The translations under genes and the position numbers were made by a program. Source: Diadema antillarum (lineage: Eukaryota). Taken from it: DNA of 64,000 nt. Under the pieces are notes generated by a model. It did not search any database, was not told the origin of the DNA, and worked only from the letters and a program-made list of their open reading frames with translations. Numbering within the stretch: position 1 is the stretch's first letter; every line of letters begins with the position of its first letter. The stretch is taken from the NCBI RefSeq assembly GCF_040938485.1, contig NW_027271849.1:248001-312000 (forward strand), read 5' to 3'. Below are positions 11,967 to 62,218 of this stretch, piece by piece.

Positions 11967-14900
11967 TTAAGATTCAGCATTCAGGCTGTTGTGTGTAAAT
12001 ATGAAATGATTTCTGTGTGTGATGATGAAATACTATCCATTCTCAAGGAACAATGTCTAACAGTAAGGAACTGTGATTGGAACATCTATTATATCCGTGA
12101 GGTGCTGTTTGACACATAATCAGTATTTTTCGTCTTTTTGTAATTTTGATGTACATACTGCTGTTATAGTGTCTCCGACGGAGGGGTGTGTATTTGCATG
12201 TCTTTCTATTTGCTAGTTTCCTGTAAGTCGTGCTACTCCCTTTCTGTTAGAAATATCAATCCGTTAAAGAAATGCAAGATGGCATACCCTATTATGGGTT
12301 GTTTTAAAGGCCTCCAAATTTGGGTCTGTCTTTAAGACAAATTCAAAAACAAAGACAAAAGCAGAAAACTTATGGGGGGAAAAAAATGTGAGTACCCCTG
12401 TTCATGTTCATTTGTGTGCCTTGTAATGTTGCCAGTTGTATCAAGAGTTTGTTATATCAATTCTCATGTAATGTAAATGGGTTGCCTTTGATGTTAATAA
12501 CATTCCTTCTAAAATGCTGCAATTTAGCTTTCAATGTATTAAGGCAATATTATTCTTCAATATTACTTCCTCAGTCATCCAGAGCTTTTTCCATGTTGTT
12601 TAATTTACACTGTCCCTAAAATGAGCAAAGATGGACACACGATTAAAGGGAATGTTCAAATTTGGTTCTGAGCTATAAAAAAACATTGGGTCATTTCTGA
12701 GGGCAGCTTAAGCCATCGTATGAACGCTGGTGGAGTTTCTCAGGCTCCAGCAGCAACTTCGTGAGTGATGGCAAAATCTTCGTGCACCTATCGTGCTTCC
12801 TTCATGTGTCCTTTGGGTAAACTTCACGAAGATTCACATCTTTCAGCGCAGTTCAGGTGCTATTGTGTGACTCTTTGTAGATATCGTCCTTGCTTCGGCT
12901 GTTGATTGGCTTCCAACGAAGTTCGGGGCCAGCTTTGTACGAAAGTGAAAATTCCGTATTCGGATGGCCATCTTTTGTCAATTTTGGGACAATGTGACCA
13001 CACCTTAAAAACAAGCATATATCTCCTGGTATGAGTTCTTGTTTTATTTTATTTCATTTCATTTTTTGTTTCTACAGACAAGATGTATTACCAAGGAAGT
13101 TGATTACTCATTGATAATCAGTGAAAACATTTCTGTACGAAAATTGGCTCAATTTATTTATAATATTATAATTAATTAATTTTAATTATATTATAATATT
13201 ACGTGGAAATCACAAATGCATATCACAAACTTGATGGTTACTCCAGGTGGCAAAAAGTACAAAGACAAATTCGGATTGAGAGGACTGAATGATTTAATCA
13301 CAACCGGGATGAATAGAAGATTTTTAATTGTCAATTTTCTTTATTACTTGACTTGGGTTTTATGCTTGAACTTCAGACTTGGCCACTTGCTCAACAAGGT
13401 GTCCTTTTGTCAATCCCATTTTTCAGAGTATTATGATGATGAGATATTTTTTGGATGTTTGAGTATCAAAACTTTTAATATTTCAGTTGTTTTTTATTTC
13501 TCATTCAGGAAGACTAGCATGTAATTTTAACGAAATAAAACTATGAAAAGTGAAAGCGCTGATTGAAATGTATATTCTTCTCTTTTTTGACAATTTTTGT
13601 ACTTTATGCAAGTTTATAAGTGCAGTACTTATTGTTTGATCGCGATATCATCTTAATGATTTCCTTATTTTTGTGGTGTATTGTACTGTAATCACATTTT
13701 GAGGAAAGAATAAAAGTGTCTTTTTTATTTTTGTTTTACTTTAATCCATTGTTTGACATGGTTTGGTATGAAAAAAAAAATGACTCAAATTAGATTGCTA
13801 CTACATGTAAGGTTGGTCAAATTTTACAGTGATTAATTGTCATCTAAGATCATTTCATTACCTACATCTTTCTCTCCATCAATTTAAGAAAATATGTTTT
13901 CTGAATAGGAAAAAGGTGTTTTTGTTTTCCTGGAACATGACTTGATATGCTAAGTACCGAATGCATAAGTTTCCATTTTTGTTTTAACTAAAATATGTTT
14001 TGGCCTTTAGATAATGTTTTGACAGTGCATCAGTATGTTTTGTGGGTTGTTTGCAATCACGGGTACAAATTCGCATACCAAAAATCACTGTTCAACAATG
14101 GGAGATTAAAGAACAAAAACAACACATGTCTTCTTCAGTATTAATATTATTAGCATCAATTTTATTTCATCAGATTTGCCAAGCAGTTACATGGATACAC
14201 CATAAAATATTCATTACATTATGCAGATTTGTGATACCACACAACTATTTACACATCAACACAATATATTCAAATGTACATGGCTGTATTAAAAGAATGT
14301 AATTGGAAAATTCAAAGTCAAGAAAATATCTTGTATGTTGACATTGCACCGTTTAGACACTGAATCTAGAATAAAATAACTACAAAGTAGCACAGTTGCT
14401 TACTTAATAGGCTGTATTATAGGCCTACCAATCAACAATCAAAACCTGAAAGGATTCCTCTTGCATAATTCAATTGATAGATAACAAATTGTTAGGAATA
14501 ATTACTACTTCCTTATCACCTCATGAACAGGTGGTCAACAAAGACATAATGAAATATGAACATAGAAAATATGTCATGATAAAAGCACCTTTTCAGAAGA
14601 ACCATGCAGTGTACAGCACAAAAACATAGGTGGGACTAAGGATTTTGTCAAAACAGCAAGGTTACCAAGTATTGGGGGATTGAGCTAAAGGCAACAAAAT
14701 ATTTTTAAAGTCATTTACATCAGAATGTAAACATAGAGGGAAGAGCAGTTGCAAACCTGAGGAAATTGCATAAGAATGTCAATCCATTTTGTATGGTATG
14801 AGAGCTTTCTGGTCCTAGCTCATAGTCTACAAGGATTTCAAAATCTTGCAGGGAATGCTATACACACGTAATTACACAAGAAAGCTTGTTTTTACAGTTG

Positions 14901-16877: not shown

Positions 16878-22439
<5,562 letters not shown>

Positions 22440-46867: not shown

Positions 46868-47436
46868 CAAGAAGGAGAATGAATGAATCTTGGTGGGTCA
46901 AATCATGGAGGTACAAAGAAAGAAGGAGAAACATCTATGGGAAGTACAAAGGGTTAGTCCGTTACACTGAACTCTCGAAAGTAATCCCCCTTAATCCTAC
47001 ATAAGCAATCAGCCCAGCAGGGAGCGATCGTAAATTAGCTCACGATTGACTGGGCTCGGTGTCCGGTGCTGGTTTTGGGCATGCGCAGTTATTGTATTCG
47101 GCGTTTCACCTTTGACCCGACGCCGATAGCATAGTAACATGGTGTGCGCCGTTGATTGTGCGATGTGTGTGAACAGGTGGTGGAGCATTCTCGGGCCAGT
47201 CTGCTGCTTTATGTCCCACTCGTATACATCAATGATGTGTCTTCAAGAAATACTGAGTCTGAACTATTTTTTGCCAAAACATATAAATATATCAATATCT
47301 TATTAAAGGTGCATATGGTAAATACAAACAATTACTTACAACAACAGAAAATGTCTAGTCAAGCATTTCTCTAAATTTTCTATAAAAGTAACAATACATT
47401 TACATGTATGTACATGTACATGAAGGGTACAGGTAC

Positions 47437-47475
47437 AATGTACCATGGAGGTACAAAAGACCTCCATGAATGTAC
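47437..47475. other. P-element excision footprint (25 bp of fused TIR ends between a 7-bp TSD)
   Basis: AATGTAC|CATGGAGGTACAAAAGA-CCTCCATG|AATGTAC. Confidence 0.8.
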
Positions 47476-47885
47476 ACATCAATGTGCCACTCTGGGCTGA
47501 ATTTTCCACATCAAATGGCAATTGATACGATTTAAAAAATTACAGCCTTTAACTGAATATCGTAGGCTCTTTCATCACTAAAGGAAAACAGCGTACTGAT
47601 AAATGGTTTGAGAGTGAAATAAAGAACTTCATTGAAATGTACAAATAAAATTAAGAGCATTTCTAACACTTCTCCTATTTCTCCACAAAGAGAAATTAAG
47701 TAAGTTGTTTAGAGGTTATTGTTTTTTGATACAGACATCATTTCATCGAGCTAATTTAGCTTCATAATCAAGGGTGCTACATAAATTATTTGAGCCACTT
47801 GCCCAGTCAGGCAAGCAAATTTTGAAATAATAAAAAAACAGTGGCCAGCAAATTAATTTAACAGTATCATTACATATATATATAT

Positions 47886-48964
47886 TGTAGCGAATCGCTT
47901 GTAGGTCGTAGAAAGGGTAGATCCCTCTGGTCCTGACACCATATGTGCAGCGAAGAACTTGTTTGGTGGTAGATGTGTGATGATAGATTGGTATCAAATT
48001 GAGGCCCTACGACGGAACTTCGATCAGGATGGCCGAGCTAGGTGTAAGTTCGTTTGGCCGCTATATACGGCCCAAGATACCAGTTAATTCGTGCTACCAA
48101 TTCATTTCTACCAGTTATGTACCAGTTCTCCATCAACAGTCCAACATACTAGCTTCGCACTTTATCTACTAAATTACATCTACCAATATCTTTACCACCA
48201 GTCACCACCAAGGTCCACTCACCTGCACTCGCTCAGGATTCTTTGGTAGGAAAGATTACTCTTCCAGTCACTCCTTGGTATAACTTTCAACAGGTAGTAT
48301 TTAATTCGCGAATACTTCTGCACAAACAACAGTCCAACTTGTTTCCGTAATACATGTACACAGTTCACCACACAGACCCGGTCCCATTACCTCCAAGTCC
48401 TGAACTTCCAAGTCCCGAACTTCCTGTCCCGTCCCGGCCTGCCACGTACGTTTAATACACAGATCTATGCTAGCTAGTGATCAGGAACACACTATCCTGA
48501 CCAATGCCTTACTAGAACTGCTAGTACACAGCTCGAACTTCGACAGCTCGATCCAACTCAACACGTACTAGACATGCCTACCTTATCCGTCCCAACTCGA
48601 CATCGATACCTAATCTATATTGCCGTATTATATTTTCACTCAATAATTGTTAGCGTAGTTAATCAATATTTCCACCACTAAAACACCAGTTTGGGAGGCG
48701 ATTCTTAACCAAAACCCTACAAATTTGGTCTCAAATTACTGGTATCTATTACCTCTCTCTGAATCTTAAGTCATCTTACCCCCCTAATGCCCTTATCTTA
48801 CGTAATAACCATAAAACTGACCAAAACCGTGACTTTTGGACATAGCCTATAGCAACGTTACTACCAACAACGATCAATTACACCTTAATACAATCGATAG
48901 TGAAAAATCAATACCCAGCTTATTGTATACAAGCTATACAGCGGAATTGATCGATTTCGCTACA
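47886..48964 (-). repeat. Complete 3' LTR (1079 bp)
   Basis: Minus strand TGTAGCGAAATCG...CGATTCGCTACA; preceded by a PPT-like tract at 48965-48981. Confidence 0.85.
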
Positions 48965-49781
48965 CGACCCCCCCGACCCACCAAGCTCGGTCCCCGAGCT
49001 TATACCACTTACAATCCTGAACACTTTAAACGTCAACACTTAAAACACAAACCGACCTCCATCACATTCCGACTGGTATCAACTACCAAAATACTTATAC
49101 TGGTGTCCACCACCAAATCTTTTAAAACATCATCTTATGATTTATAATAGCACTCATCATTCCTTTGGAACCATTAACACTATGTACATTTAACGCTACC
49201 TCTCCAACCTTGCCTAATACCCTTGCTTCCAACATGGGCACGACCAACTCAAAATTTGAGAAGAAGAAGAAGGCTAAGGCTCCAAAACCTGCCGTTATCA
49301 TAATATACCAATTGCAATGTGGATACCAATATGGTTCTACCAACTCTTCAAACAAATTCTACCAACACCTGGTATCGCTTCAATGACTTCCCTCCACTAC
49401 TCCTTGGAACCAATACATCTCCATACATAAGCTTCATTGATTCCAACTTAATACCATCGTTCTTTGAAAACAATTACATTGGTAATGTCCATCAATCTTA
49501 AAAAAAACCCCGTCTAACTGTAACAACTTAATGTCCAAATTAAATTGGGCAGATTATATTTAGCGTCCATATCTGCCCTTCTCCATATACCAACAATCGC
49601 TTCCACATCTTCCTTCCGGTATCCGCTACCACTTTCACTATCTTCGCGAACAATTAACTTGGTAATACTCATCAGTCCTCAGAAACATCCAATTATAACT
49701 TATTGTCCAAACTCAATTTGGGCAAAGTATGTTTAATGTCCATATCTGCCCATGCACTTCTTTTTAAAAATTTCGCTTCCA

Positions 49782-50480
49782 CTACTTTTCCTCCACGGTT
49801 TCGGTCACTACCTCCAAACACTCGCCACCGGTCGTCAAAAACCTCTCCGTCTTCCTGGTCCACGTTCGGCCAGGCCGCAACACCAGCGTCTCGGTAGTGC
49901 TGAAACTGGTCCTCCCTCTGCGACGTAATTCTCCCAGCCTCCTTCGGATAATCCCTCCGTCAATGTCGGATGGTGAGACCTGGACCCCGATTTCACATGT
50001 TACCGGGGCTTCTACTTCAGGTACCACGTTCTCGATCACCAATCGCCGCCTTCCGCCAGTCAGGTCGAAGACCCCGCTGCCATAGCTGTCCTCATCCAGC
50101 ACCGGGGTACTGCTTCTCTCAGAGGTGACGCTCCTCACCGGGCTGACACTCCTCTCCGGGGTGACGCACCTCTCAGGTGTGCGCCGGGACGGGGTTGAAG
50201 TAGAGGGGTGTAGAGAGGATCTACTCCTGGGTCTGCTTTCCGTCGACGGCGGCTTCTTATTCTTAATTAGCGCATAAACTGGGGTTTTCAAATGTACCCG
50301 CCCTGGAGCTACATCAGTGGCGTGAGTTCCGTAGTGGCGTTTTACTTCTCGCTCGTGCAGCGTCTGGAAAGCACAGCGATCACACTTAAATTTAGGGGTG
50401 TGCACGTCGAATTCGTGTCGTTGCATCGAGCTTCTACTGGAAAAGGACCGCCGGCACACCTTACAATGGTAGACTTCTCC
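49782..50480 (-). pseudogene. Retroelement-borne C2H2 zinc-finger ORF (2 fingers, Ser/Pro/Thr-rich linker); no ATG at the 5' end
   Basis: EVYHCKVCRRSFSSRSSMQRHEFDVH-TPKFKCDRCAFQTLHEREVKRHYGTH are two C-x2-C-x12-H-x3/4-H fingers. The ORF-track 'M' is a GTG inside finger 1. Confidence 0.75.
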
Positions 50481-50977
50481 CCTGTCTGACTTCTGTATGC
50501 CCGAAGTACAGGACGGGTAGTTTTCCCGTCTATGGACTTGAGCGCATGGCTTCCGTAGACCCGCAAACTTTCACCATTGTTTTTGCAGAAAATGCACCAA
50601 GACACTGAGCTGCTGAGTGGTCCATCACTTCCATCTCGTCCTCGTAGAGCGGTGATGTCTGGTAGAATCTCCTCGTTGCTCAGCCAACGGCTACCAGTTG
50701 ACAGACACCAAGTAGCATCGCCGTCCCTCCGTAAGGCCGGATACTGGTATCTCGTCCCTAGGTCCTGGGATCCACCCTTTTTCGTCACTGTCGCTTCCCA
50801 TTCGTCTAACCCCAGGTAGCTATTGAACGGGCCTCGCACCTGTTCAAAATCAAAGAACTGGTTGCCCGTCTCTTGGTCCACGGTCTTCCTCTTCTTCCTC
50901 CCCGTTGATACCAGCTTACTCAGCCCGAAATAATCGTTGAAGGGACTGTACAAATCCCCCTCTTTGGAAGATGCCAT
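50342..50977 (-). pseudogene. nanos: Nanos-like ORF inside the LTR element (NIM plus first CCHC finger; 4th ligand C->R; second finger absent)
   Basis: ATG at 50977 in a strong Kozak context (GACGCCATGG). N-terminal YSPFNDYFGLSKLV resembles the Nanos NOT1-interacting motif (e.g. FSSWNDYLGLATL). WCIFCKNNGESLRVYGSHALKSIDGKTTRPVLRAY matches Nanos C.FC.NN.E....Y..H.LK..DG...CP.LR.Y. Confidence 0.85.
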
Positions 50978-51091
50978 GGCGTCGCCTGCACTGCACCTGC
51001 ATATTAATAATACCACAGTCTTTAATCCTTGTTATTTAGCTCGTCGAATGTATTGAGTATCACTCAAATATTTAGATTCGTTACTTAGGGC

Positions 51092-51496
51092 CTAATTATA
51101 ATACTGCGGCCGACGCCTATCCCTCCTCGGATAACGCCTTCCTCCACTCCATTCATCACCGTCGTATGTCGTTGGCACAGTCGGAGACTCCCGGTTCCTA
51201 ACTGGCGATTGAGAATCCACTTCTCTCTCTTCATAGCTAGAGGGGTGAGTAGCATCAGCTTCTTCCAGCCCTGACTCTTCCAGCTCCACGTCGGCAGCAG
51301 TGCCTTGCTGCTGGTCTCCAGCCTGTACCACCTCCCTGTTTGGCTCGAACTCCCAAACCGGTCTTGGTACCCCAGTGTAGAGCTTCAACCGATCTACGTG
51401 GACAACCAAAGGCTTGGAGCGAGGCGTCACCTGGAGTTGAACAGTCACGTCAGATATTTTGGTGACTATCAGGTACGGTCCCAGCCATTTGGTCTG
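51092..51496 (-). pseudogene. Gypsy pol C-terminal (post-integrase) fragment
   Basis: LQTKWLGPYLIVTKISDVTVQLQVTPRSKPLVVHVDRLKLY is the W.GPY...VHV.RLK.Y integrase tail. It ends in RRYPRRDRRRPQYY, typical of a pol terminus. Confidence 0.8.
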
Positions 51497-52112
51497 TAAT
51501 ACATGTACACAGTTCACCACGCAGACCCGGTCCCGTTACCTCCAAGTTTCGAACTTCCAAGTCCCGAACTTCCAGTCCCGTCCCGGCCTGCCACGTACGT
51601 TTAATACACAGATCTATGCTAGCTAGTGATTAGGAACACACTATCCTGACCAATGCCTTACTAGAACTGCTAGTACACAGCTCGAACTTCGACAGCTCGA
51701 TCCAACTCAACATGTACTAGACGTGCCTACCTTATCCGTCCCAACTCGACATCGATACCTAATCTGTATTGCCGTATTATATTTTCACTCAATAATTGTT
51801 AGCGTAGTTAATCAATATTTCCACCACTAAAACACCAGTTTGGGGAGCGATTCTTAACCAAAACCCTACAAATTTGGTCTCAAATTACTGGTATCTATTA
51901 CCTCTCTTCGAATCTTAAGTCATCTTACCCCCCTAATGCCCTTATCTTACGTAATAACCATAAAACTGACCAAAACCGTGACTCTTGGACATAGCCTATA
52001 GCAACGTTACTACCAACAACGATCGTTACACCTTAATACAATCGATAGTGAAAAATCAATACCCAGCTTATCGTATACAAGCTATACAGCGGAATTGATC
52101 GATTTCGCTACA
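51496..52112 (-). repeat. Truncated 5' LTR (617 bp) fused directly to the integrase tail
   Basis: Near-identical to 48347-48964; lacks the distal ~460 bp of LTR, the PBS, gag and most of pol. Confidence 0.85.
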
Positions 52113-52139
52113 TGATATATATATATATATATATATATA

Positions 52140-52674
52140 CAGTGCACTCCCGTTATAACGAAATGCTCGGGACCGGCAGTTTTCTTTCGTTATAGCGAAA
52201 TTTCGTTATAACCGAACAAATACAATATATAACGAAAACAAGAAAACCACGTATATATATCATATTCTGTTTGCTGAATACTCATCATACACTGGAAAGC
52301 TATGTGAAATGTGATGGGATAACTGTATCACAATAATAAACGCTAGTTCCCCTCAGAAACTGTGCGTGACACAAAGAGCGAACACACAGTGGTGTGAAGC
52401 GTTCACCCATGCAGAGAAGCTATAAATGCTTGTTCCCCTACAAATTTTCGAAAGCAATTCGCATTTCGTTATAACGGAGCACATTTCTTTTGTTTTTCTT
52501 TGTCTATGGCGCTCGGAAAAGACTTCGTTATAACGGAAATTTCGCTATAACCGTGTTCGTTATAAGCGAATCTTTTACCATACACTTTTATGGCGATTAT
52601 TTTGGGACCAGAAGATTTACTTCGTTATAACGAAATTTCGTTATAACCGTGTTCGTTATAACGGGAGTGCACTG
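52140..52674. mobile_element. pogo/Tigger-like MITE (535 bp) in a (TA)n tract
   Basis: TIRs CAGTGCACTCCCGTTATAACG / CGTTATAACGGGAGTGCACTG, TA flanks, repeated GTTATAAC motifs; related to 5201-6996. Confidence 0.85.
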
Positions 52675-52707
52675 TAAATATATATATATAAACATAACAA
52701 AAATTAC

Positions 52708-54463
52708 CATCAAATTTCTTGACTTGTTGTGGAATCCTGAGTTTTCAAAGTTATTGCGACACGTCTTAAGGAGATGGGGGGCATCAATTATTAAGTAAAT
52801 GCGCTTCTGGGTAGAAGGGTGGATGAAGCTGAAGCTATCATCCGTTTCCATCAACATGCTATAAAAACTTCTGTTCGACGAAGCACCATCCGACACCAAA
52901 GCTCGAATGTTGAAGCCATATAGCTCCATTATTTCAGTGGCCTCCATGATGATGGCATAAAGTTGGTCACTAGACGCACTGTTTGTGGCAAAATATGCCA
53001 CAGTGGAATGATAGCTGTGGCAAATGCCACAAACCATGACTGGCCTTTGCAGGGGCTGCTTCCTTGGTACAAGTTCTTGCATATGACGCAAATCCATCAT
53101 TAAGAGTTCCCATGGATGTGAACCCAGTAATATGTCCTGTTGAATGGCTGTACACCAATCCTTCGATGATCTTGACCTCATCAAAACATAAGGTTGCATT
53201 CTTCTGGTGTGGCTTGAGATTCTCCAGGTTTATGTCTGTCACTATTCTGCATATGAGGTCTCTGTTGAAACCAGGGTTGTTAACAGTGAAATTGGTGTAT
53301 TGTTTGAGAGTATTGTGATGGGGAAGGGTGAGAAATCCTGAGTTTCTTAGAAGATCATATGCTGATGACGATTTCGCGTATAGGGCAATGCATAGGCGTA
53401 ATATGGCCGGATGCCATCTAGTGGCCTGAGGGTGTTCCTTCAGTCTTTTTACTTGATGGTCCCAAAGGACACGCATCGGGGAATTCTCTTCAAAATGATT
53501 GTGTACAGTCTTAGTCTCAGAAGAGACTATCGAAGAGGAAGACTGATTTTCTTCCTGTTCAAGGATTTGTGCCTTTTCCTCAAACAGCCTTGTCATTTTT
53601 TCTTCTAACGAAGTCACATGCTTCTTGAGGTTTCTTCCGTGAGCTCTACTCTGTGATAATTTTTTTGAAAGTCTTTCTTTGTTCAAATATCTGAAATTTG
53701 CTTTGGGGGCTGGTGAGTGGTCAGCCTGTAGGTGGTTGTGAAGACAGGAAAGATTAGATCTGTATATTCGACATTCTCTACACCGTGATGTTTCACTAGT
53801 TAGTAGTGGACAGGAATTATGACGAATGGTGGTCGAGTAAGCTAGATGATGAACATATACAGGTCTATTTTCCAGAAGATGGTACTCTGTGTTCCCGGGG
53901 CAGACTGAAAGCTCCCTAAATGTGCGAACGAGGCTCTGAACAAAGTCACAAGTCAATAAATTGGGTATCTCGGTGAAAACGGACTGCTTATTAACATCTC
54001 TGCCATTGACTTTTACCATCCATTCCCCTGTCAATGTCACAATCAAGCATTTCCCTGAATTTCCATCACTGTCGAGTGACAAAACATACAGTTTGGAATT
54101 CTTCTGGTTGACAACTAGGTTATGGCTTCTTGCTTCTCCTTCAATTTCCTTGAACAGTTCATCTTGTTCTCCTGGGGAGCATACCTTGCAGTCTCTTTCA
54201 TGGGGATTAAAGCTTGCGAGAGTGATGCCAATCTCACAAACCTGCTTCTTGATTCGCTTGCAATTCCATTGGTAGATCTTCCTCTCACAGCAATGGCAAA
54301 TCTGTGAAGGATGCACGGCAACATCATCGCTTGAAACATCAAGGGAAAGAGATTGTTGAATGTGTTTCTTGAATTTTTCTCTCGGATACCATCGGTTAGA
54401 GTTCTTTCGTCCACATAGCCTGCACAGAGATGCAAGCCTCCTGGTATGCAGGTCCTCTGCCAT
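52708..54463 (-). pseudogene. P-element/THAP9-like transposase with RAG1-N-like zinc-binding N-terminus; frameshift ~53040; C-terminal half not found
   Basis: The 497-aa ORF has RWHPAILRLCIALYAKSSSAYDLLRNSGFLTLP...LCFDEVKIIEGLVY (first catalytic D). It continues in another frame as MVCGI...VAYF...LVSDGASSNR (second D) ...DAPHLLKTCRN (D-x2-H motif), up to a GT donor at 52707. A splice acceptor lies 7 nt before the ATG. Confidence 0.88.
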
Positions 54464-55804: not shown

Positions 55805-56460
55805 GTCAAATCTATGTGCAGTTTGCATGTAACACCTGCTAACTTGCCAAATCCAACAAAACTGATCACTGAATTCGTCGACGACCGGCGGTGTGGCCTG
55901 AATATTTTGTGTAACAGCGATCATGTGGAGCTCTTTCGCAGTGTTCAGACGTAACAGTGTGGACCACTATGCTCCGTAATGAAGAATACAGCCGTTTGTA
56001 TCTGCGCTTTGTGACGTACTAGCAGTAGAGAGATATTCCCGAGAACACCGATAGGACTGTTGGCACCAAATGCATAGACTTACCTATCTGTAGGTTCGAG
56101 GGGTGACTGTTTCTTATAGATGGTGTTCAGAGTTTCTCAACTCATTATGTTCACTGACGCCCCTGTGTCAATGATAGCTGTAGTCTTGACATCATTGATG
56201 AACATAGATGCTTTGAGTTTACAATTGATTGCTCTCATCCGATGGACTTAGAGCGAACAAATAGTCCTTGTTGGTTGAACCATTTTGTGCTGCTTGTACA
56301 GATGGTTGTGATTGCGGTTGCGACTGTGAGTGTTGTGCTGTCTGTTCCCCAAGGTTGACCTCAGCTTGTTGTCTCATCCTGGTTTTACACACTCTTGCAA
56401 AATGAGCAGGTTTTTCCTTGTCTTGAAATGGGTGATCAATATGTGGATATTTGTCACCAC
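55805..56460 (-). mobile_element. Degraded Gypsy gag-knuckle/protease fragment
   Basis: GDKYPH...HFARVCK, then MFINDVKTTAIIDTGASVNIMS*...GPTLL...TCKLHID with stops and frameshifts; cut at the P-element TSD. Confidence 0.75.
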
Positions 56461-58480
56461 CATATCCTTGCTCAACTGGGATAAGGGAGCGACTAGCGAG
56501 AGCAACGACGACAGGCTTGTCGTTGGCTGGATCATGTTGAACTAGCATGGCGCACAGTCCAATGGGGCTTGCGTCTGTTACCACAGCTGTGCGAAACTGT
56601 GGGTTGAAGTATGCCATGTTGCAGTGGTCAACGATAGCACGCTTGATGTCGTCGAAGGCAGATTGATGACGATGACCCCATTCCCATGCTGCATCTTGCC
56701 TGGTAAGCATGCGGAGTGGCTCAGATAGGGTCGCTAATCGTGGGATGAAGCGTGCACAATACGTAGCCAACCCGAGGAAACTGCGCACTTCATTGCGAGA
56801 AGTTGGAGGGGGTGCATCAACTAGCGATTGAACTTTTGCTGGGCTCGGTGAAACACAGGTCGATGAGAAGATGTGTCCAAAGAACTCAATGGATGACTTG
56901 TTGACTTCACATTTCGCTTTGTGAAGGGTGAGATTCTTGTCTCTTAACCGCTGCAGGCAATCGCGAAGACGATGATCTTGCTCAGTCTGATCACGACCGA
57001 AGATGAGGATATCATCGCTGATATTGATGACACCAGGTAGGCCTGCGAGAGCTGACTGAATGAAGTTCTGGTACTGCTCTGCACCGCTGTTCACTCCGAA
57101 GTTCAAGCGTTTGTACTGAAACAAATCAGCATGAGTCGAGAACAGAGTTAGATAGCGTGAAGCTTCATCGAGCTCGATCTGATGATAGCCACTGTTGAGA
57201 TCGAGTTTAGAGAAAGCCCGGGCTCCATTCAGCTTTGCGATGATGTCATCGATGGTTGGGGTAACGTGTCGTTCACGCCTGATTGCTTGGTTGACAGCTC
57301 ACATGTCCACGCAAATTCTGATCTGATATGGCTGTTTGGGTTTCTGTACGACACGAATAGGCAAAACCCATGGTGTTGGTTGATTACGCACAGGCTCGAT
57401 GATGTCTAGCTGCTAGAGACGTTCAAGCTCGGCTTCGACACGCTTACAAACATGGAACGGTATGCGTCTATGGAGTTGCGTGATGGGCGTAACTGACTCA
57501 TCAATATGGAGCTGACAAGTTGCATCCTTCAGCTTACCCAATCCGGTAAACCGATCAGCGAATTCATCGAAGATTGATGAGTTGACCTGTCCACTGATGT
57601 TGTATGCGATGCTGATGAGCTGTAATTCACTGGACGTTGACAGGCACAGCAAGGTAGGCCCAGCATGCTGTGTGATGAAGAATGTTGCACAACAGTATCC
57701 AGACTTGTAGCGAACTGGAAGTTCGATCTGCCCAAGAAGAGAAAATGGACGAGTAGATCCAAATGCGAAGATTTGCTGGTGGGCAGGTTTCAACGCTGGT
57801 TGACGGGAAGACATTTTACGCAGGGTTGCTTCGCTCATGATGTTGACTGGAGCACCAGTGTCAAGAATAACATCGGTGTTGACACCATTGATGGAGACTG
57901 TCACGGTAGTCACTTTGTCCTTTTGGGGAGAGTTGACCGTGAAAAGGTAGTTGTCACTGTTGGGACTCTCAGCATTCACAGTGTTGTGATGTGAAGGGGT
58001 AGAGGTAGACGGTGTAACAAGTTCATCGGTCACACTCGAGCTCCCTGTGGTGTGATCATGCTGTGCTAGCACATTGACATGTTTCCTGTCACGCTGTCGT
58101 TTTCGGCAGTACTTAGCGAAATGGTTCAATTTGTGACAGTACACGCACGTTTGACCTCGAGCTGGACATGGTTTACGTGCATCATGCGGGTAGCGACCGC
58201 CACAGTTCTGACACATTGTGGTAGTGGGACTGCGATTACTGTTCACTGAATTGCTCTTACCCACTGGCTGTGGCATGGGCTGAGAGCGGTGTGATCGTGA
58301 AGACTGCTTTGGAACATAGTTCACAGATGATGATGCATGAGTTTTTATCTCATCCGCCTGTGAAGAGGCTGCATTCGCGGCACGGATGATAGACACTGCA
58401 CGGTCGAGCGACAGATCCGATTCGCGAAGCAGACGTTGTCTAATGGCTGCATTGTTCATGCCAATGATGATGCGATTCAG
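56461..58480 (-). mobile_element. Degraded Gypsy gag-PR-RT-RNaseH fragment
   Basis: IRQRLLRESDLSLDRA (gag), CQNCGGRYPH...CVYCHKLNHFAKYC (knuckles), ILDTGAPVN (protease), HRRIPFH, FQYKRLNFG, NISDDILIFG (RT), VVTDASPIGLCAML...ASRSL (RNase H); stop and frameshift near 57410. Confidence 0.9.
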
Positions 58481-61015: not shown

Positions 61016-62218
61016 ATTTTTATGCCTCCGCCACGAAGTGGTGCCGGAGGCANNNNNNNNNNNNNNNNNNNNNNNNNNNNNNNNNNNNNNNNNNNNNNNN
61101 NNNNNNNNNNNNNNNNNNNNNNNNNNNNNNNNNNNNNNNNNNNNNNNNNNNNNNNNNNNNNNNNNNNNNNNNNNNNNNNNNNNNNNNACAGGGTAACTAC
61201 CAAAACCTTTTGAGGTATCCTAATGAAACTTGGCATGTATGTGTATTAGGGGATGAAGTTGTGCCTATCAACTTTTGGGTGCACATGCTCAAGGTCAAAG
61301 GTCAAAAGGTCAAGGTCAAATGCTTAAAATTTCACTATTTCCCCCATATCTATGCAATGCCTGAAGATATTTTCTTGAAACTTATTGTATACATGTATTA
61401 CCCAATTAAGATTCTCTGGTGAAAGTTTGGGGTCATGAGGTCAAAAGGTCAAAGGTCAAAAGGTCAAGTAAAATGTTAAAATTTCACTTTTTTCTCTGTA
61501 TCTTGGAAATTGTTCAAGGTATCTTCATGGAACATAGTATATATGCATGTACTGACTGGCAGTAGTTATCTAGGGAATTTAGGGTTCATGGGGTCAAAGG
61601 TCAGGGGTCAAAGGTCAAGGGCAATACTTCAAAATTTTACTTTTTTCCTTATATTTATGCAATGCCAGCAGGATTATTTTTTTTAACTTGATGTATGCAT
61701 GTATAACCCAATAGAGATTCTCTGGGATTTTTTTTTTGCCAAGGAGGTCAAAGGTCAAAAGGTCAAAGATCAAGTGAAAGTGCTGAACTTACTTCTTTCT
61801 CCATATCTCGGAAGTGGCTCAAGTTATCTTGAAACTTAGTACATATTTATGTATGTTCTGCCTGACAGTGATTCTCTTATAAATCAAAGGCCAGATGAAA
61901 ATGATAACAATTTACTGTTCAATACAGAAATTGCACTTTTTCTCCATACCTTGAAAATTGCTCAGTGCATAAACTTATGAAAGGATCAAAGTCAAGTTAA
62001 AGTTCTTAAATCCCCAAATACATGCTCTCCTATTCATCCAATTAAACATAGGTCAAGGAAGGTAAGCATTCAATACATTTGTGACAAACCTGTCATTTTA
62101 ATATTTTGCCAATTTTGTGAAAATGTAATCACACATTGTCCACATGTACTATAGACCTATTAGGAGAATCATGCATTATGGCGGAGGCATACCAGTCGCC
62201 ATAGCGACATTTCTAGTT
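61016..62218 (+). mobile_element. DINE-1/Helentron-associated element, copy 2
   Basis: TTTTTATGCCTCCGCC + inverted GGAGGCA, GGTCAAAGGTCA arrays, 3' GGCGGAGGCAT subTIR followed by GTCGC-CATA-GCGAC stem-loop and CTAGTT. Confidence 0.75.

What the first reader, a model, noticed from the sequence alone, without database searches (positions are those of the whole stretch)
50342..50977. A Gypsy LTR retrotransposon carrying a captured nanos germline-determinant gene
Seen: an intronless ORF with a strong Kozak ATG between the integrase tail and the 3' LTR, in the element's sense orientation. It encodes YSPFNDYFGLSKLV, a second similar PFNSYLGL motif, and WCIFCKNNGE..VYGSHALKSIDGKTT(R)PVLRAY. Established: Nanos proteins combine an N-terminal NOT1-interacting motif that recruits CCR4-NOT with tandem CCHC fingers, act with Pumilio, and maintain germline/multipotent cells. 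In this copy the fourth ligand is CGT (one transition from TGT Cys, 50513-50515) and the second finger is missing at an apparent deletion, so it is probably defective. Inference: the parent family carries nanos in the env-like position and could manipulate germline fate, survival or host silencing mRNAs to favour its own transmission. A CAG|GTGAGT donor in the LTR (48225-48217) and AG acceptors just upstream of the ATG would allow a spliced subgenomic mRNA. I know of no described nanos-bearing LTR family, but this needs a literature and Repbase check.
Basis: partly seen in the sequence, partly recalled or inferred. Interest (0 to 1): 0.9.

Follow-up and report, generated by a model that had tools for sequence, protein, structure and literature searches.

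The report
Sea-urchin retrotransposon family carrying nanos
The window holds a broken copy of a jumping-gene family of Diadema sea urchins whose complete, recently active members carry, after their own replication genes, a full copy of nanos (a gene animals use to set up and keep their germ cells) plus a second zinc-finger gene, something not described before in the literature I could search.

Summary
The ORF is real (minus strand, 50342-50977) and passes Pfam's zf-nanos cut-off, but keeps only the first finger. It lies in a 4.2-kb deletion derivative (47886-52112) of a Ty3/Gypsy LTR retrotransposon.

Ten loci from Diadema antillarum and D. setosum carry the same element with a 222-codon nanos reading frame at the same place. 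Their annotated products include both CCHC fingers and an N-terminal NOT1-interacting-type motif. At least four copies are about 10 kb with an open 1754-1758-aa gag-pol, and one has identical LTRs.

A third ORF with two C2H2 fingers follows nanos. Every insertion with a readable end sits in an (AT)n run.

Between subfamilies, dN/dS is 0.13-0.16 for gag-pol, 0.26 for ORF3, and 0.45-0.5 for nanos (0.08-0.16 in its zinc-finger domain). The cargo groups with echinoid host nanos (98% bootstrap) but is only 36-40% identical, so the capture is old or the gene fast-evolving.

A perfect splice-donor motif in every LTR and acceptor-like modules before both accessory ATGs fit spliced subgenomic mRNAs. 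That is untested. Expression and function are inferred, not shown. No prior description was found.

The parts
47886..52112 (-). Whole element copy in the window: a deletion derivative, 4227 bp against about 10 kb for full-length relatives
   Evidence: BLAST against the full-length relative L001 and the LTR ends TGTAGCG...CTACA. It is 92.7-94.5% identical to the Diadema copies over the integrase tail plus the nanos part.
52115..52139 (.). (AT)12.5 run next to the 5' end of the element
   Evidence: TRF. The same kind of flank occurs at all related insertions.
51493..52112 (-). 5' LTR remnant, the first ~57% of the LTR
   Evidence: 621-bp direct repeat, 96.9% identical to 48344-48964. It starts TGTAGCG after the (AT)n run.
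51092..51492 (-). gag-pol remnant. Only the integrase C-terminal tail up to the natural stop is left. It was broken by one large deletion that also took the rest of the 5' LTR and the PBS.
   Evidence: Pfam Integrase_p58_C 42.6 bits. tblastn gives 88% identity to residues 1624-1743 of the 1758-aa gag-pol of L001.
50978..51091 (-). Spacer between the pol stop and the ORF2 ATG, with a T/A-rich tract and three AG dinucleotides (acceptor-like module)
   Evidence: Near-identical in all 9 copies compared across both subfamilies.
50342..50977 (-). ORF2, the nanos-derived gene, broken. One internal deletion (shared with ORF3) removes the second CCHC finger and the C-terminal tail, and one zinc-ligand position is substituted. 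The reading frame then runs on through foreign sequence to a stop. The NOT1-interacting-type motif is at residues 10-23 and a degenerate second copy at residues 50-57.
   Evidence: It is 87-91% identical to the 222-aa Diadema proteins over its first 77%.
49782..50459 (-). ORF3 remnant: two C2H2 fingers, a Ser/Pro/Arg-rich 18-nt-repeat region and a conserved C-terminal half. It has lost its start and about the first 20 codons through the same deletion that broke ORF2, and is otherwise open to its natural stop.
   Evidence: 88-89% identical to the 243-244-aa ORF3 of L001, L004 and L007. TRF finds the repeat at 50102-50174.
48965..49781 (-). Non-coding stretch after ORF3, ending in a G-rich polypurine tract (48965-48984) that abuts the 3' LTR
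   Evidence: The same tract stands before the 3' LTR in every copy.
47886..48964 (-). 3' LTR, full length (1079 bp). It contains the CAGGTGAGT donor-like motif at 48217-48225.
47874..47885 (.). (AT)6 run next to the 3' end of the element

Best explanation
SHOWN. The window, from a Diadema-type sea urchin, carries a dead, internally deleted copy of a Ty3/Gypsy LTR retrotransposon family. Full-length members are about 10 kb: 1.0-1.1-kb LTRs, a TGG-starting PBS, one gag-pol ORF (zinc knuckle, protease, RT, RNase H, integrase), then ORF2, then ORF3, then a polypurine tract. ORF2 is a complete 222-aa Nanos-type protein with an N-terminal NOT1-interacting-type motif, two CCHC fingers and the echinoid Nanos C-terminal tail. 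ORF3 is a 243-244-aa protein with two C2H2 fingers and no detectable relatives. The family is present in D. antillarum and D. setosum, inserts into (AT)n runs, and was active very recently (one copy has identical LTRs and all three ORFs open). ORF2 descends from an echinoid host nanos gene and its zinc-finger domain is under purifying selection. The window copy lost gag-pol through one deletion, and the second nanos finger plus the ORF3 start through another. INFERRED. ORF2 and ORF3 are expressed from spliced subgenomic mRNAs that join the single consensus donor in the LTR to acceptor-like modules a few bases before each ATG, as env is in errantiviruses. The ORF2 protein works like Nanos: it binds RNA through its fingers (probably with Pumilio), recruits CCR4-NOT through the N-terminal motif, and so represses chosen mRNAs where the element is expressed, presumably in germline or early embryonic cells, to the element's advantage. 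The confidence of 0.8 refers to the structural and evolutionary part. I put the functional part at about 0.4.
For: The same architecture occurs in 10 of 10 related loci (mapped). Pfam on L001 gag-pol finds zf-CCHC, protease, RVT_1, RNase H, Integrase_H2C2, rve and Integrase_p58_C in that order, and ORF2 scores 80.7 bits for zf-nanos over profile positions 1-53 of 54. gag-pol is open in L001, L004, L007 and L008, and ORF3 is open in L001, L004 and L007. LTR pairs are 98.9-100% identical. LTR ends, PBS, PPT and (AT)n flanks are shown. Thirteen distinct annotated proteins sit on different chromosomes or contigs. dN/dS is 0.13-0.16 for gag-pol, 0.26 for ORF3 and 0.45-0.5 for ORF2, with the ORF2 finger domain at 0.08-0.16, p 0.0006-0.007. 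Between subfamilies, coding parts are 92-94% identical against 80-89% for the LTR and the post-ORF3 stretch. The closest relatives are the host nanos genes of Diadema and Lytechinus: collinear over the full length at 36-40% identity, and standing alone with no LTR, pol or ORF3 nearby. The cargo-plus-echinoid-host clade has 98% bootstrap. Solved structures matched are zebrafish Nanos 3ALR (E 1.2e-18) and Drosophila Nanos 5KL1. The spacing Y10-F13-D15-Y16 equals the F40-W43-D45-Y46 contacts of human Nanos1 with CNOT1 (PMC4003280). CAGGTGAGT occurs exactly once in every LTR of every copy and almost nowhere else in the loci. Similar acceptor-like modules precede both the ORF2 and ORF3 ATGs.
Against: There are no expression data of any kind, so splicing, translation and germline activity are untested. 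All related loci were found through annotated nanos-like proteins, 9 of the 10 with the full 222-aa product, so the intactness of ORF2 in them is ascertainment, not evidence. The one copy sampled independently, the window, is broken. Overall ORF2 dN/dS is only moderately below 1, and the N-terminal 60 codons give about 1. The donor lies in an averagely conserved LTR block, not a conserved island. The acceptor tracts are only weakly pyrimidine-rich. Individual copies carry private substitutions at key motif positions. The NJ tree places the cargo outside the Diadema+Lytechinus host clade (86%), so the donor lineage and date are unresolved. Ectopic Nanos is reported to be toxic to embryos (bioRxiv 10.1101/2022.08.12.503758), which makes a freely expressed cargo costly to the host.
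Confidence: 0.8

Rival explanations
1. Passenger cargo. The family picked up nanos (and ORF3) and carries them without benefit. The ORFs look conserved only because the sampled copies are young and were chosen for being intact.
For: Ascertainment bias, since the loci came from annotated nanos-like proteins. Overall dN/dS is 0.45-0.5 and about 1 in the N-terminal third. The window copy and L012 have a broken ORF2.
Against: The cargo is only 36-40% identical to its nearest host relative yet keeps all eight zinc ligands in 11 of 12 two-finger proteins and the four motif contact positions in 12-13 of 13. The finger domain has pN/pS of 0.08-0.16 between subfamilies that differ by dS of about 0.12-0.19. 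The ORF is more conserved than the neighbouring non-coding DNA. A useless 0.8-kb insert would be expected to be lost from a compact element over that time.
Confidence: 0.12
2. Host gene family spread by a vehicle. The nanos copies are kept because they serve the sea urchin as extra nanos paralogues, and the retrotransposon is only how they were duplicated.
For: RefSeq annotates them as nanos homolog 1-like or 3-like genes. Selection on the finger domain does not by itself say who benefits.
Against: The copies sit inside elements with open gag-pol and near-identical LTRs at different places in the two species. That is turnover, not conserved orthologous loci. Separate single-copy host nanos genes exist (L009, L011). 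Individual copies decay.
Confidence: 0.06
3. One-off capture or chance. A processed nanos pseudogene landed by accident between two LTRs in this window only, or the ORF is a chance reading frame.
For: In the window alone the ORF is truncated and the element has no gag-pol.
Against: Ten other loci have the same gene at the same place in the same element. The Pfam score is above the curated cut-off. Identity to the 222-aa proteins is 87-91%.
Confidence: 0.01

Closest known systems
Host Nanos proteins of echinoids (Diadema P0179/P0020, Lytechinus P0023/P0185; the Nanos2 class studied in Strongylocentrotus and Lytechinus)
   Same: Single-exon coding sequence. N-terminal aromatic-x2-aromatic-x-D-Y-F-G-L motif, two CCHC fingers (about 79% identical in that domain by my count) and the C-terminal TPR..GR.R tail. 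All are collinear.
   Different: The cargo is encoded inside a retrotransposon, is multi-copy, and is only 36-40% identical overall. It has an N-terminal extension and an extra ~20-residue segment with a degenerate second motif. It has no detectable DNA similarity to the host gene or its flanks, so it lacks the host UTRs that restrict Nanos2 to germ cells.
Env-carrying Ty3/Gypsy elements (errantiviruses of insects and other metazoans; PMC13524379)
   Same: An extra gene between pol and the 3' LTR. The likely expression route is a spliced subgenomic mRNA running from a donor near the 5' end to an acceptor just before the extra ORF.
   Different: The cargo is a cytoplasmic RNA-binding repressor plus a C2H2 protein, not a membrane-fusion glycoprotein (Pfam). 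[quoted passage not shown]
Bdelloid rotifer LTR retrotransposons with non-env ORF3s (GDSL esterase, DEDDy exonuclease, dUTPase; PMC5408684)
   Same: LTR retrotransposon families that keep a captured non-envelope gene downstream of pol.
   Different: Those cargoes are enzymes shared among retroelement classes. Here the cargo is a developmental regulator taken from the host germline toolkit.
Drosophila TART-A, which captured part of the host piRNA-pathway gene nxf2 (PMC7785250)
   Same: A retroelement carrying host germline-pathway sequence in a way thought to serve the element.
   Different: TART-A is a non-LTR element that carries a gene fragment acting through antisense small RNAs. Here a whole protein-coding gene is kept open and constrained.
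Acutely transforming retroviruses carrying cellular oncogenes (own knowledge, not tested here)
   Same: Capture of a cellular regulatory gene into a retroelement, expressed under LTR control.
   Different: Those captures usually replace viral genes and make the virus defective and short-lived. This family keeps an open gag-pol and has persisted in two species.

Membership tests
Nanos (Pfam zf-nanos, PF05741) | Two consecutive CCHC zinc fingers with the family's spacing, scoring above the curated cut-off | tested here: met
   Family members score 80.7 bits over profile positions 1-53 of 54 and match PDB 3ALR at E 1.2e-18 and 5KL1 at 2.3e-16. All eight ligands are kept in 11 of 12 two-finger proteins.
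Nanos (Pfam zf-nanos, PF05741) | The same feature in the window copy itself | tested here: not met
   The score is 33.9 bits, above the cut-off of 27, but covers only profile positions 1-35 of 54. The second finger is absent and one ligand of the first is substituted. The window copy is a remnant of a nanos gene, not a working one.
Nanos with NOT1-interacting motif (vertebrate type, PMC4003280) | N-terminal motif with three aromatic residues and an invariant Asp at spacing i, i+3, i+5, i+6 | tested here: met
   Y10, F13, D15 and Y16 correspond to F40, W43, D45 and Y46 of human Nanos1. They are kept in 12-13 of 13 proteins and shared with the host echinoid Nanos. This is a pattern match only.
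Nanos with NOT1-interacting motif (vertebrate type, PMC4003280) | [quoted passage not shown] | not testable with these tools
   The PDB sequence search returned no NIM-CNOT1 entry; the tool leaves out chains shorter than 20 residues. No binding data exist.
Nanos-Pumilio repressor | Partnership with Pumilio on target RNAs | not testable with these tools
   There is only the domain-level match to Drosophila Nanos from the Pumilio-Nanos-RNA complex, 5KL1.
Ty3/Gypsy LTR retrotransposon (Metaviridae) | Domain order: gag zinc knuckle, protease, RT, RNase H, integrase | tested here: met
   L001 gag-pol residues: zf-CCHC 404-419, protease 506-596, RVT_1 838-998, RNase H 1061-1189, integrase 1310-1664. 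The window copy keeps only the integrase tail.
Ty3/Gypsy LTR retrotransposon (Metaviridae) | Direct LTRs ending TG...CA, a polypurine tract before the 3' LTR, and a short target duplication | tested here: met
   LTRs run TGTAGCG...(C/T)ACA and a G-rich tract abuts the 3' LTR in all copies. L008 shows a 4-bp ATAT duplication. In the others the duplication cannot be read inside (AT)n.
Ty3/Gypsy LTR retrotransposon (Metaviridae) | Primer-binding site complementary to the 3' end of a host tRNA | tested here: inconclusive
   An 18-mer starting TGG lies 2 nt after the 5' LTR in all full-length copies. The two tRNA genes found in the sequence I held do not match it. The window copy has no PBS.
Errantivirus / env-carrying Gypsy | The extra ORF encodes an envelope or fusion glycoprotein | tested here: not met
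   ORF2 is zf-nanos and ORF3 has two C2H2 fingers, with no glycoprotein family hit. It resembles these elements in gene position only.

The most novel reading that the evidence does not exclude
A retrotransposon family encodes its own germline determinant. The element-made Nanos, freed from the UTR and protein-stability controls that confine host Nanos2 to primordial germ cells, would reprogramme translation through CCR4-NOT and Pumilio. It would act in the cells where the element is transcribed, so as to favour its own inheritance. A second private zinc-finger protein (ORF3) may help steer integration into TA microsatellites. That would be a new way for a genomic parasite to act on the germline: by supplying the regulator itself rather than by evading silencing.
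Probability: 0.35. Interest if true: 0.92.

Novelty: new variant of a known kind. Interest (0 to 1): 0.85.

Why it matters
LTR retrotransposons with an extra gene after pol are known, but the known cargoes are envelope proteins or enzymes. A complete, constrained copy of nanos is a different kind of cargo. Nanos is one of the few regulators shared by germ cells across animals. Sea urchins confine it to primordial germ cells by several layers of control, and its ectopic expression is reported to be toxic.

The finding turns a general question into a testable case with named sequences in two sequenced species: can mobile elements manipulate germline fate or translation directly? The held survey of metazoan Ty3/Gypsy elements found no env-carrying members in echinoderms. 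This family shows that the env position is in use there, for something else.

There is also a practical consequence. At least 13 RefSeq models named 'nanos homolog 1-like/3-like' or 'uncharacterized protein' in Diadema belong to this cargo family, and all ten loci examined lie inside copies of the element. They would inflate any count of nanos paralogues.

The strict (AT)n target choice and the orphan C2H2 ORF3 are further leads.

Tried and rejected
- **Upstream Gypsy-type ORFs as the missing gag-pol.** I considered whether the ORFs at 56219-58459 (-) are the missing gag-pol of this copy. They are not: only 32% amino-acid identity, so it is a different element.
- **Top hits of the exhaustive search.** The top non-family hits (P0014 from a fish, P0015 from a moth) looked like possible cross-phylum relatives. 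They score high only because their nanos finger domain is duplicated within the protein.
- **ORF3 relatives.** 2560 word-sharing candidates, none with E at or below 0.001. PDB gives only generic tandem C2H2 matches.
- **ORF3 fold.** The AlphaFold2 single-sequence model has mean pLDDT 35 and is unusable, so I made no fold search. Tool rules barred handing in locus-derived relatives as an alignment, and I did not try.
- **Source species of the window.** An exact look-up of the 497-aa neighbouring ORF is not on record. By diagnostic sites the copy is nearer the subfamily common in D. antillarum (36 of 49) and has 24 private differences per kb. The species stays open.
- **PBS tRNA.** No matching tRNA in the sequence held.
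- **Rfam.** Nothing on 47000-53000.
- **Same ORF2/ORF3 deletion elsewhere.** I checked whether the truncated protein P0006 marks a second copy with the same deletion. It does not.
- **Prior description.** Nine full-text searches found no nanos-bearing transposable element (among others). Repbase could not be checked.
- **Run failure.** The first phylogeny script timed out and I redid it.
Full report
**1. What is in the window**

The ORF named in the finding is on the minus strand, from the ATG at 50977 to the stop at 50342-50344 (211 aa). Pfam zf-nanos scores 33.9 bits against a curated cut-off of 27, but only profile positions 1-35 of 54 are matched.

Immediately upstream, in the same orientation, lies the C-terminal tail of a Ty3-type integrase (Integrase_p58_C, 42.6 bits). 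In a second frame, overlapping the end of the ORF, runs a 225-codon open frame with two C2H2 fingers.

A 621-bp direct repeat (48344-48964 and 51493-52112, 96.9% identical) brackets all of this.

**2. Relatives show what the window copy is a remnant of**

A protein search returned four clusters of 222-aa proteins from Diadema antillarum and D. setosum. They are 87-91% identical to the first 77% of the window ORF, and the annotated proteins have both CCHC fingers. The clusters hold 13 distinct RefSeq proteins on different chromosomes or contigs, named 'nanos homolog 1-like', 'nanos homolog 3-like' or 'uncharacterized protein'.

I fetched ten of their loci (L001-L008 and L012). In all ten the nanos ORF has the same neighbours as in the window: integrase tail upstream, the C2H2 frame downstream, then a G-rich tract and an LTR.

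Five loci hold copies with both LTRs. L001, L007 and L008 are 10,022-10,040 bp, L004 is 10,441 bp, and L002 is 12,382 bp because foreign DNA sits in its 3' LTR. The layout of the full-length copies is:

- LTRs of 995-1124 bp that begin TGTAGCG and end (C/T)ACA.
- A TGG-starting 18-mer 2 nt after the 5' LTR.
- One gag-pol ORF.
- A 115-nt spacer.
- ORF2 (nanos, 222 codons).
- About 160 nt of spacer.
- ORF3 (243-244 codons).
- About 0.8-1.0 kb of non-coding DNA.
- The polypurine tract and the 3' LTR.

The L001 gag-pol (1758 aa) gives zf-CCHC, aspartic protease, RVT_1, RNase H, Integrase_H2C2, rve and Integrase_p58_C in the Gypsy order. Its ORF2 gives zf-nanos at 80.7 bits over the whole profile.

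gag-pol is open in L001, L004, L007 and L008. ORF3 is open in L001, L004 and L007. LTR pairs are 98.9-100% identical. L007 in D. setosum has identical LTRs and all three ORFs open. The family has therefore been active very recently.

**3. State of the window copy**

Measured against these relatives, the true LTR is about 1.08 kb. The window's 3' LTR is complete (47886-48964). Its 5' LTR is only the first 621 bp and is joined directly to the integrase tail. The breaks are:

- gag-pol: broken once, by a deletion that also removed the rest of the 5' LTR and the PBS. About 7% of the ORF is left.
- ORF2 and ORF3: broken together, by one further deletion of about 370 bp. It took the second nanos finger, the nanos tail and the ORF3 start.
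- ORF2: also has one substituted zinc ligand.

The remaining parts have no stops or frameshifts.

The copy carries 24 private differences per kb and 3.1% LTR divergence, so it is an older insertion than the others. By diagnostic sites it is nearer the subfamily common in D. antillarum (36 of 49 sites). I could not establish the species of the window.

The Gypsy-type ORFs at 56219-58459 belong to an unrelated element (32% identity).

**4. Origin of the cargo**

The closest proteins outside the family are host nanos genes: P0179 (D. setosum), P0020 (D. antillarum), and P0023 and P0185 (Lytechinus). They are collinear over the full length at 36-40% identity. They share three features with the cargo:

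- the N-terminal motif,
- the fingers (about 79% identical by my count),
- a C-terminal TPR..GR.R tail.

The three whose loci I fetched are single-exon genes standing alone, with no pol, LTR pair or ORF3 within 10 kb and no DNA-level similarity to the element.

In a neighbour-joining tree on 165 columns, cargo plus echinoid host Nanos form a clade with 98% bootstrap, excluding starfish, molluscs and cnidarians. Inside that clade the cargo falls outside Diadema+Lytechinus (86%). This may reflect an old capture or fast evolution.

No cargo-type protein of 50-87% identity exists in the 5.8-billion-protein collection, and the exhaustive search gave one representative for the whole family. In these databases the nanos-bearing family is therefore confined to Diadema.

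The fish and moth proteins at the top of the exhaustive search are artefacts of internally duplicated finger domains.

**5. Constraint**

Values between the two subfamilies (gag-pol dS about 0.18):

| Region | dN/dS or pN/pS | Note |
|---|---|---|
| gag-pol | 0.13-0.16 | |
| ORF3 | 0.26-0.27 | |
| ORF2, whole | 0.42-0.50 | binomial p 0.004-0.02 for a deficit of replacements |
| ORF2, finger domain | 0.08-0.16 | p 0.0006-0.007 |
| ORF2, middle | about 0.3-0.4 | |
| ORF2, C-terminal tail | 0.5-0.7 | |
| ORF2, first 60 codons | about 1 | |

Coding parts are 92-94% identical between subfamilies, against 80-89% for the LTR and the post-ORF3 region.

Within the N-terminal part, the four positions that correspond to the CNOT1-contacting residues of human Nanos1 (F40, W43, D45, Y46; PMC4003280) are Y10, F13, D15 and Y16. 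They are kept in 12-13 of 13 proteins.

Caveat: because the loci were found through annotated nanos-like proteins, 'ORF2 is open' in them is ascertainment. The dN/dS contrasts are much less affected by this.

**6. How the accessory genes may be expressed (inference)**

CAGGTGAGT, a full match to the splice-donor consensus, occurs once in every LTR of every copy. That includes the subfamily whose LTRs are only about 80% identical. AGGTRAGT occurs almost nowhere else in the 20-kb loci.

The donor lies in an averagely conserved block and survives an adjacent indel.

Before the ORF2 ATG all copies have GGTATTATT, then three AGs, then ACGxCATGG. Before the ORF3 ATG a similar module recurs (GGTATTATT..TGCAG..ACGATG).

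One donor and two acceptor-like modules placed 4-25 nt before the two ATGs fit two spliced subgenomic mRNAs. No transcript data were available to me.

In the window copy the donor survives only in the 3' LTR and the ORF3 module is gone.

**7. How it most likely works**

Shown: the gene content, its origin, its constraint and the recent activity of the family.

Inferred: the ORF2 protein acts as Nanos does. It binds RNA through its fingers (matches to solved Nanos domains) and recruits CCR4-NOT through the N-terminal motif.

In sea urchins, host Nanos2 is confined to primordial germ cells by a 3'-UTR element and a protein degradation element. It works with Pumilio on targets such as CNOT6 and eEF1A, and ectopic Nanos is reported to be toxic (bioRxiv 10.1101/2022.08.12.503758). 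The cargo gene has none of the host's flanking sequence, so it would escape the UTR-based control.

I think the most likely role is to set up Nanos-type repression in the cells where the element is transcribed, to the element's benefit (about 0.4). Less likely roles are:

- competition with host Nanos for partners,
- a role in handling the element's own RNA,
- no role at all (passenger, about 0.12).

ORF3 is an orphan. Its two C2H2 fingers and the family's strict insertion into (AT)n runs suggest a targeting role, but that is only an idea. The (AT)n evidence is seven insertions with both ends read, including a clean 4-bp ATAT duplication in L008, plus one with only its 3' end read (L005).

**8. 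Comparison with what is known**

In gene position and likely expression the family resembles env-carrying Gypsy elements, but the membership test fails because there is no glycoprotein. A recent survey found such elements in most phyla but not in echinoderms (PMC13524379).

It resembles the bdelloid LTR families with non-env ORF3s (PMC5408684) in keeping a captured gene after pol. It resembles TART-A/nxf2 (PMC7785250) in taking sequence from the host germline toolkit.

I found no description of a nanos-bearing mobile element in nine full-text searches. The D. setosum genome paper does not mention nanos or Gypsy. Repbase could not be consulted. I rate it a new variant of a known kind, with an unprecedented cargo.

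Noticed in passing
window 52115-52139 and 47874-47885; L001, L002, L004, L007, L008 at both element ends; L005 at the 3' end: Every insertion of this family with a readable end abuts an (AT)n run. L008 shows a clean 4-bp ATAT target duplication. This points to a strong target preference for TA microsatellites.
   Followed up: partly
window 49782-50459 (-); L001:10828-11562, L004:10848-11579, L007:10848-11579: A third ORF of the family (243-244 aa) has two C2H2 fingers, a Ser/Pro/Arg-rich repeat and a highly conserved C-terminal half. Its dN/dS is 0.26. It has no homologue in the protein collection and no usable structure model.
   Followed up: partly
L001:9950-10000 and L001:10780-10827 (window 50978-51030 for the first): The stretches just before the ORF2 and ORF3 start codons share a similar acceptor-like module (GGTATTATT, then TGCAG, then ACGA(C)ATG). 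It is conserved in both subfamilies.
   Followed up: partly
proteins P0001-P0013 (RefSeq XP_ models of D. antillarum and D. setosum): Cargo genes of the element are annotated as 'nanos homolog 1-like/3-like' or 'uncharacterized protein', while the open 1750-aa gag-pol next to them is not called. Counts of nanos paralogues in Diadema are therefore inflated by element copies.
   Followed up: partly
window 52597-54463 (-): Two overlapping ORFs (497 and 200 aa) look like a P-element/THAP9-type transposase remnant (TNP-like RNase H N-terminal domain). The N-terminus of the longer one scores 23.2 bits for RAG1_imp_bd, just under the 23.3-bit cut-off.
   Followed up: no
window 56219-58459 (-): Protease and RT/RNase H fragments of a different Gypsy-type element, only 32% identical to the pol of the nanos-bearing family.
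   Followed up: partly
L001:4423-4450 and 13355-13382 (also L002, L005, L008): In one subfamily the LTR contains, about 89 bp before its end, a second copy of the LTR-end motif followed by a PBS-like TGGTGTCAGGA. This looks like a short internal duplication of the LTR end and leader.
   Followed up: no
L002:12880-15220; L004:13031-13435; L005/L006 within gag-pol; L012 within ORF3: Several family copies carry nested insertions of other sequence in the 3' LTR, in gag-pol or in ORF3. I did not analyse them.
   Followed up: no
window 19810-20529 versus 61445-62140: Three inverted-repeat pairs (109-148 nt, 73-87% complementary) lie about 41 kb apart. They are probably two copies of another repeat family in opposite orientation.
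   Followed up: no
proteins P0014 (Coryphaenoides rupestris) and P0015 (Tuta absoluta): These annotated proteins contain two to four tandem copies of the nanos finger domain. They may be real tandem duplications or assembly or annotation artefacts.
   Followed up: no
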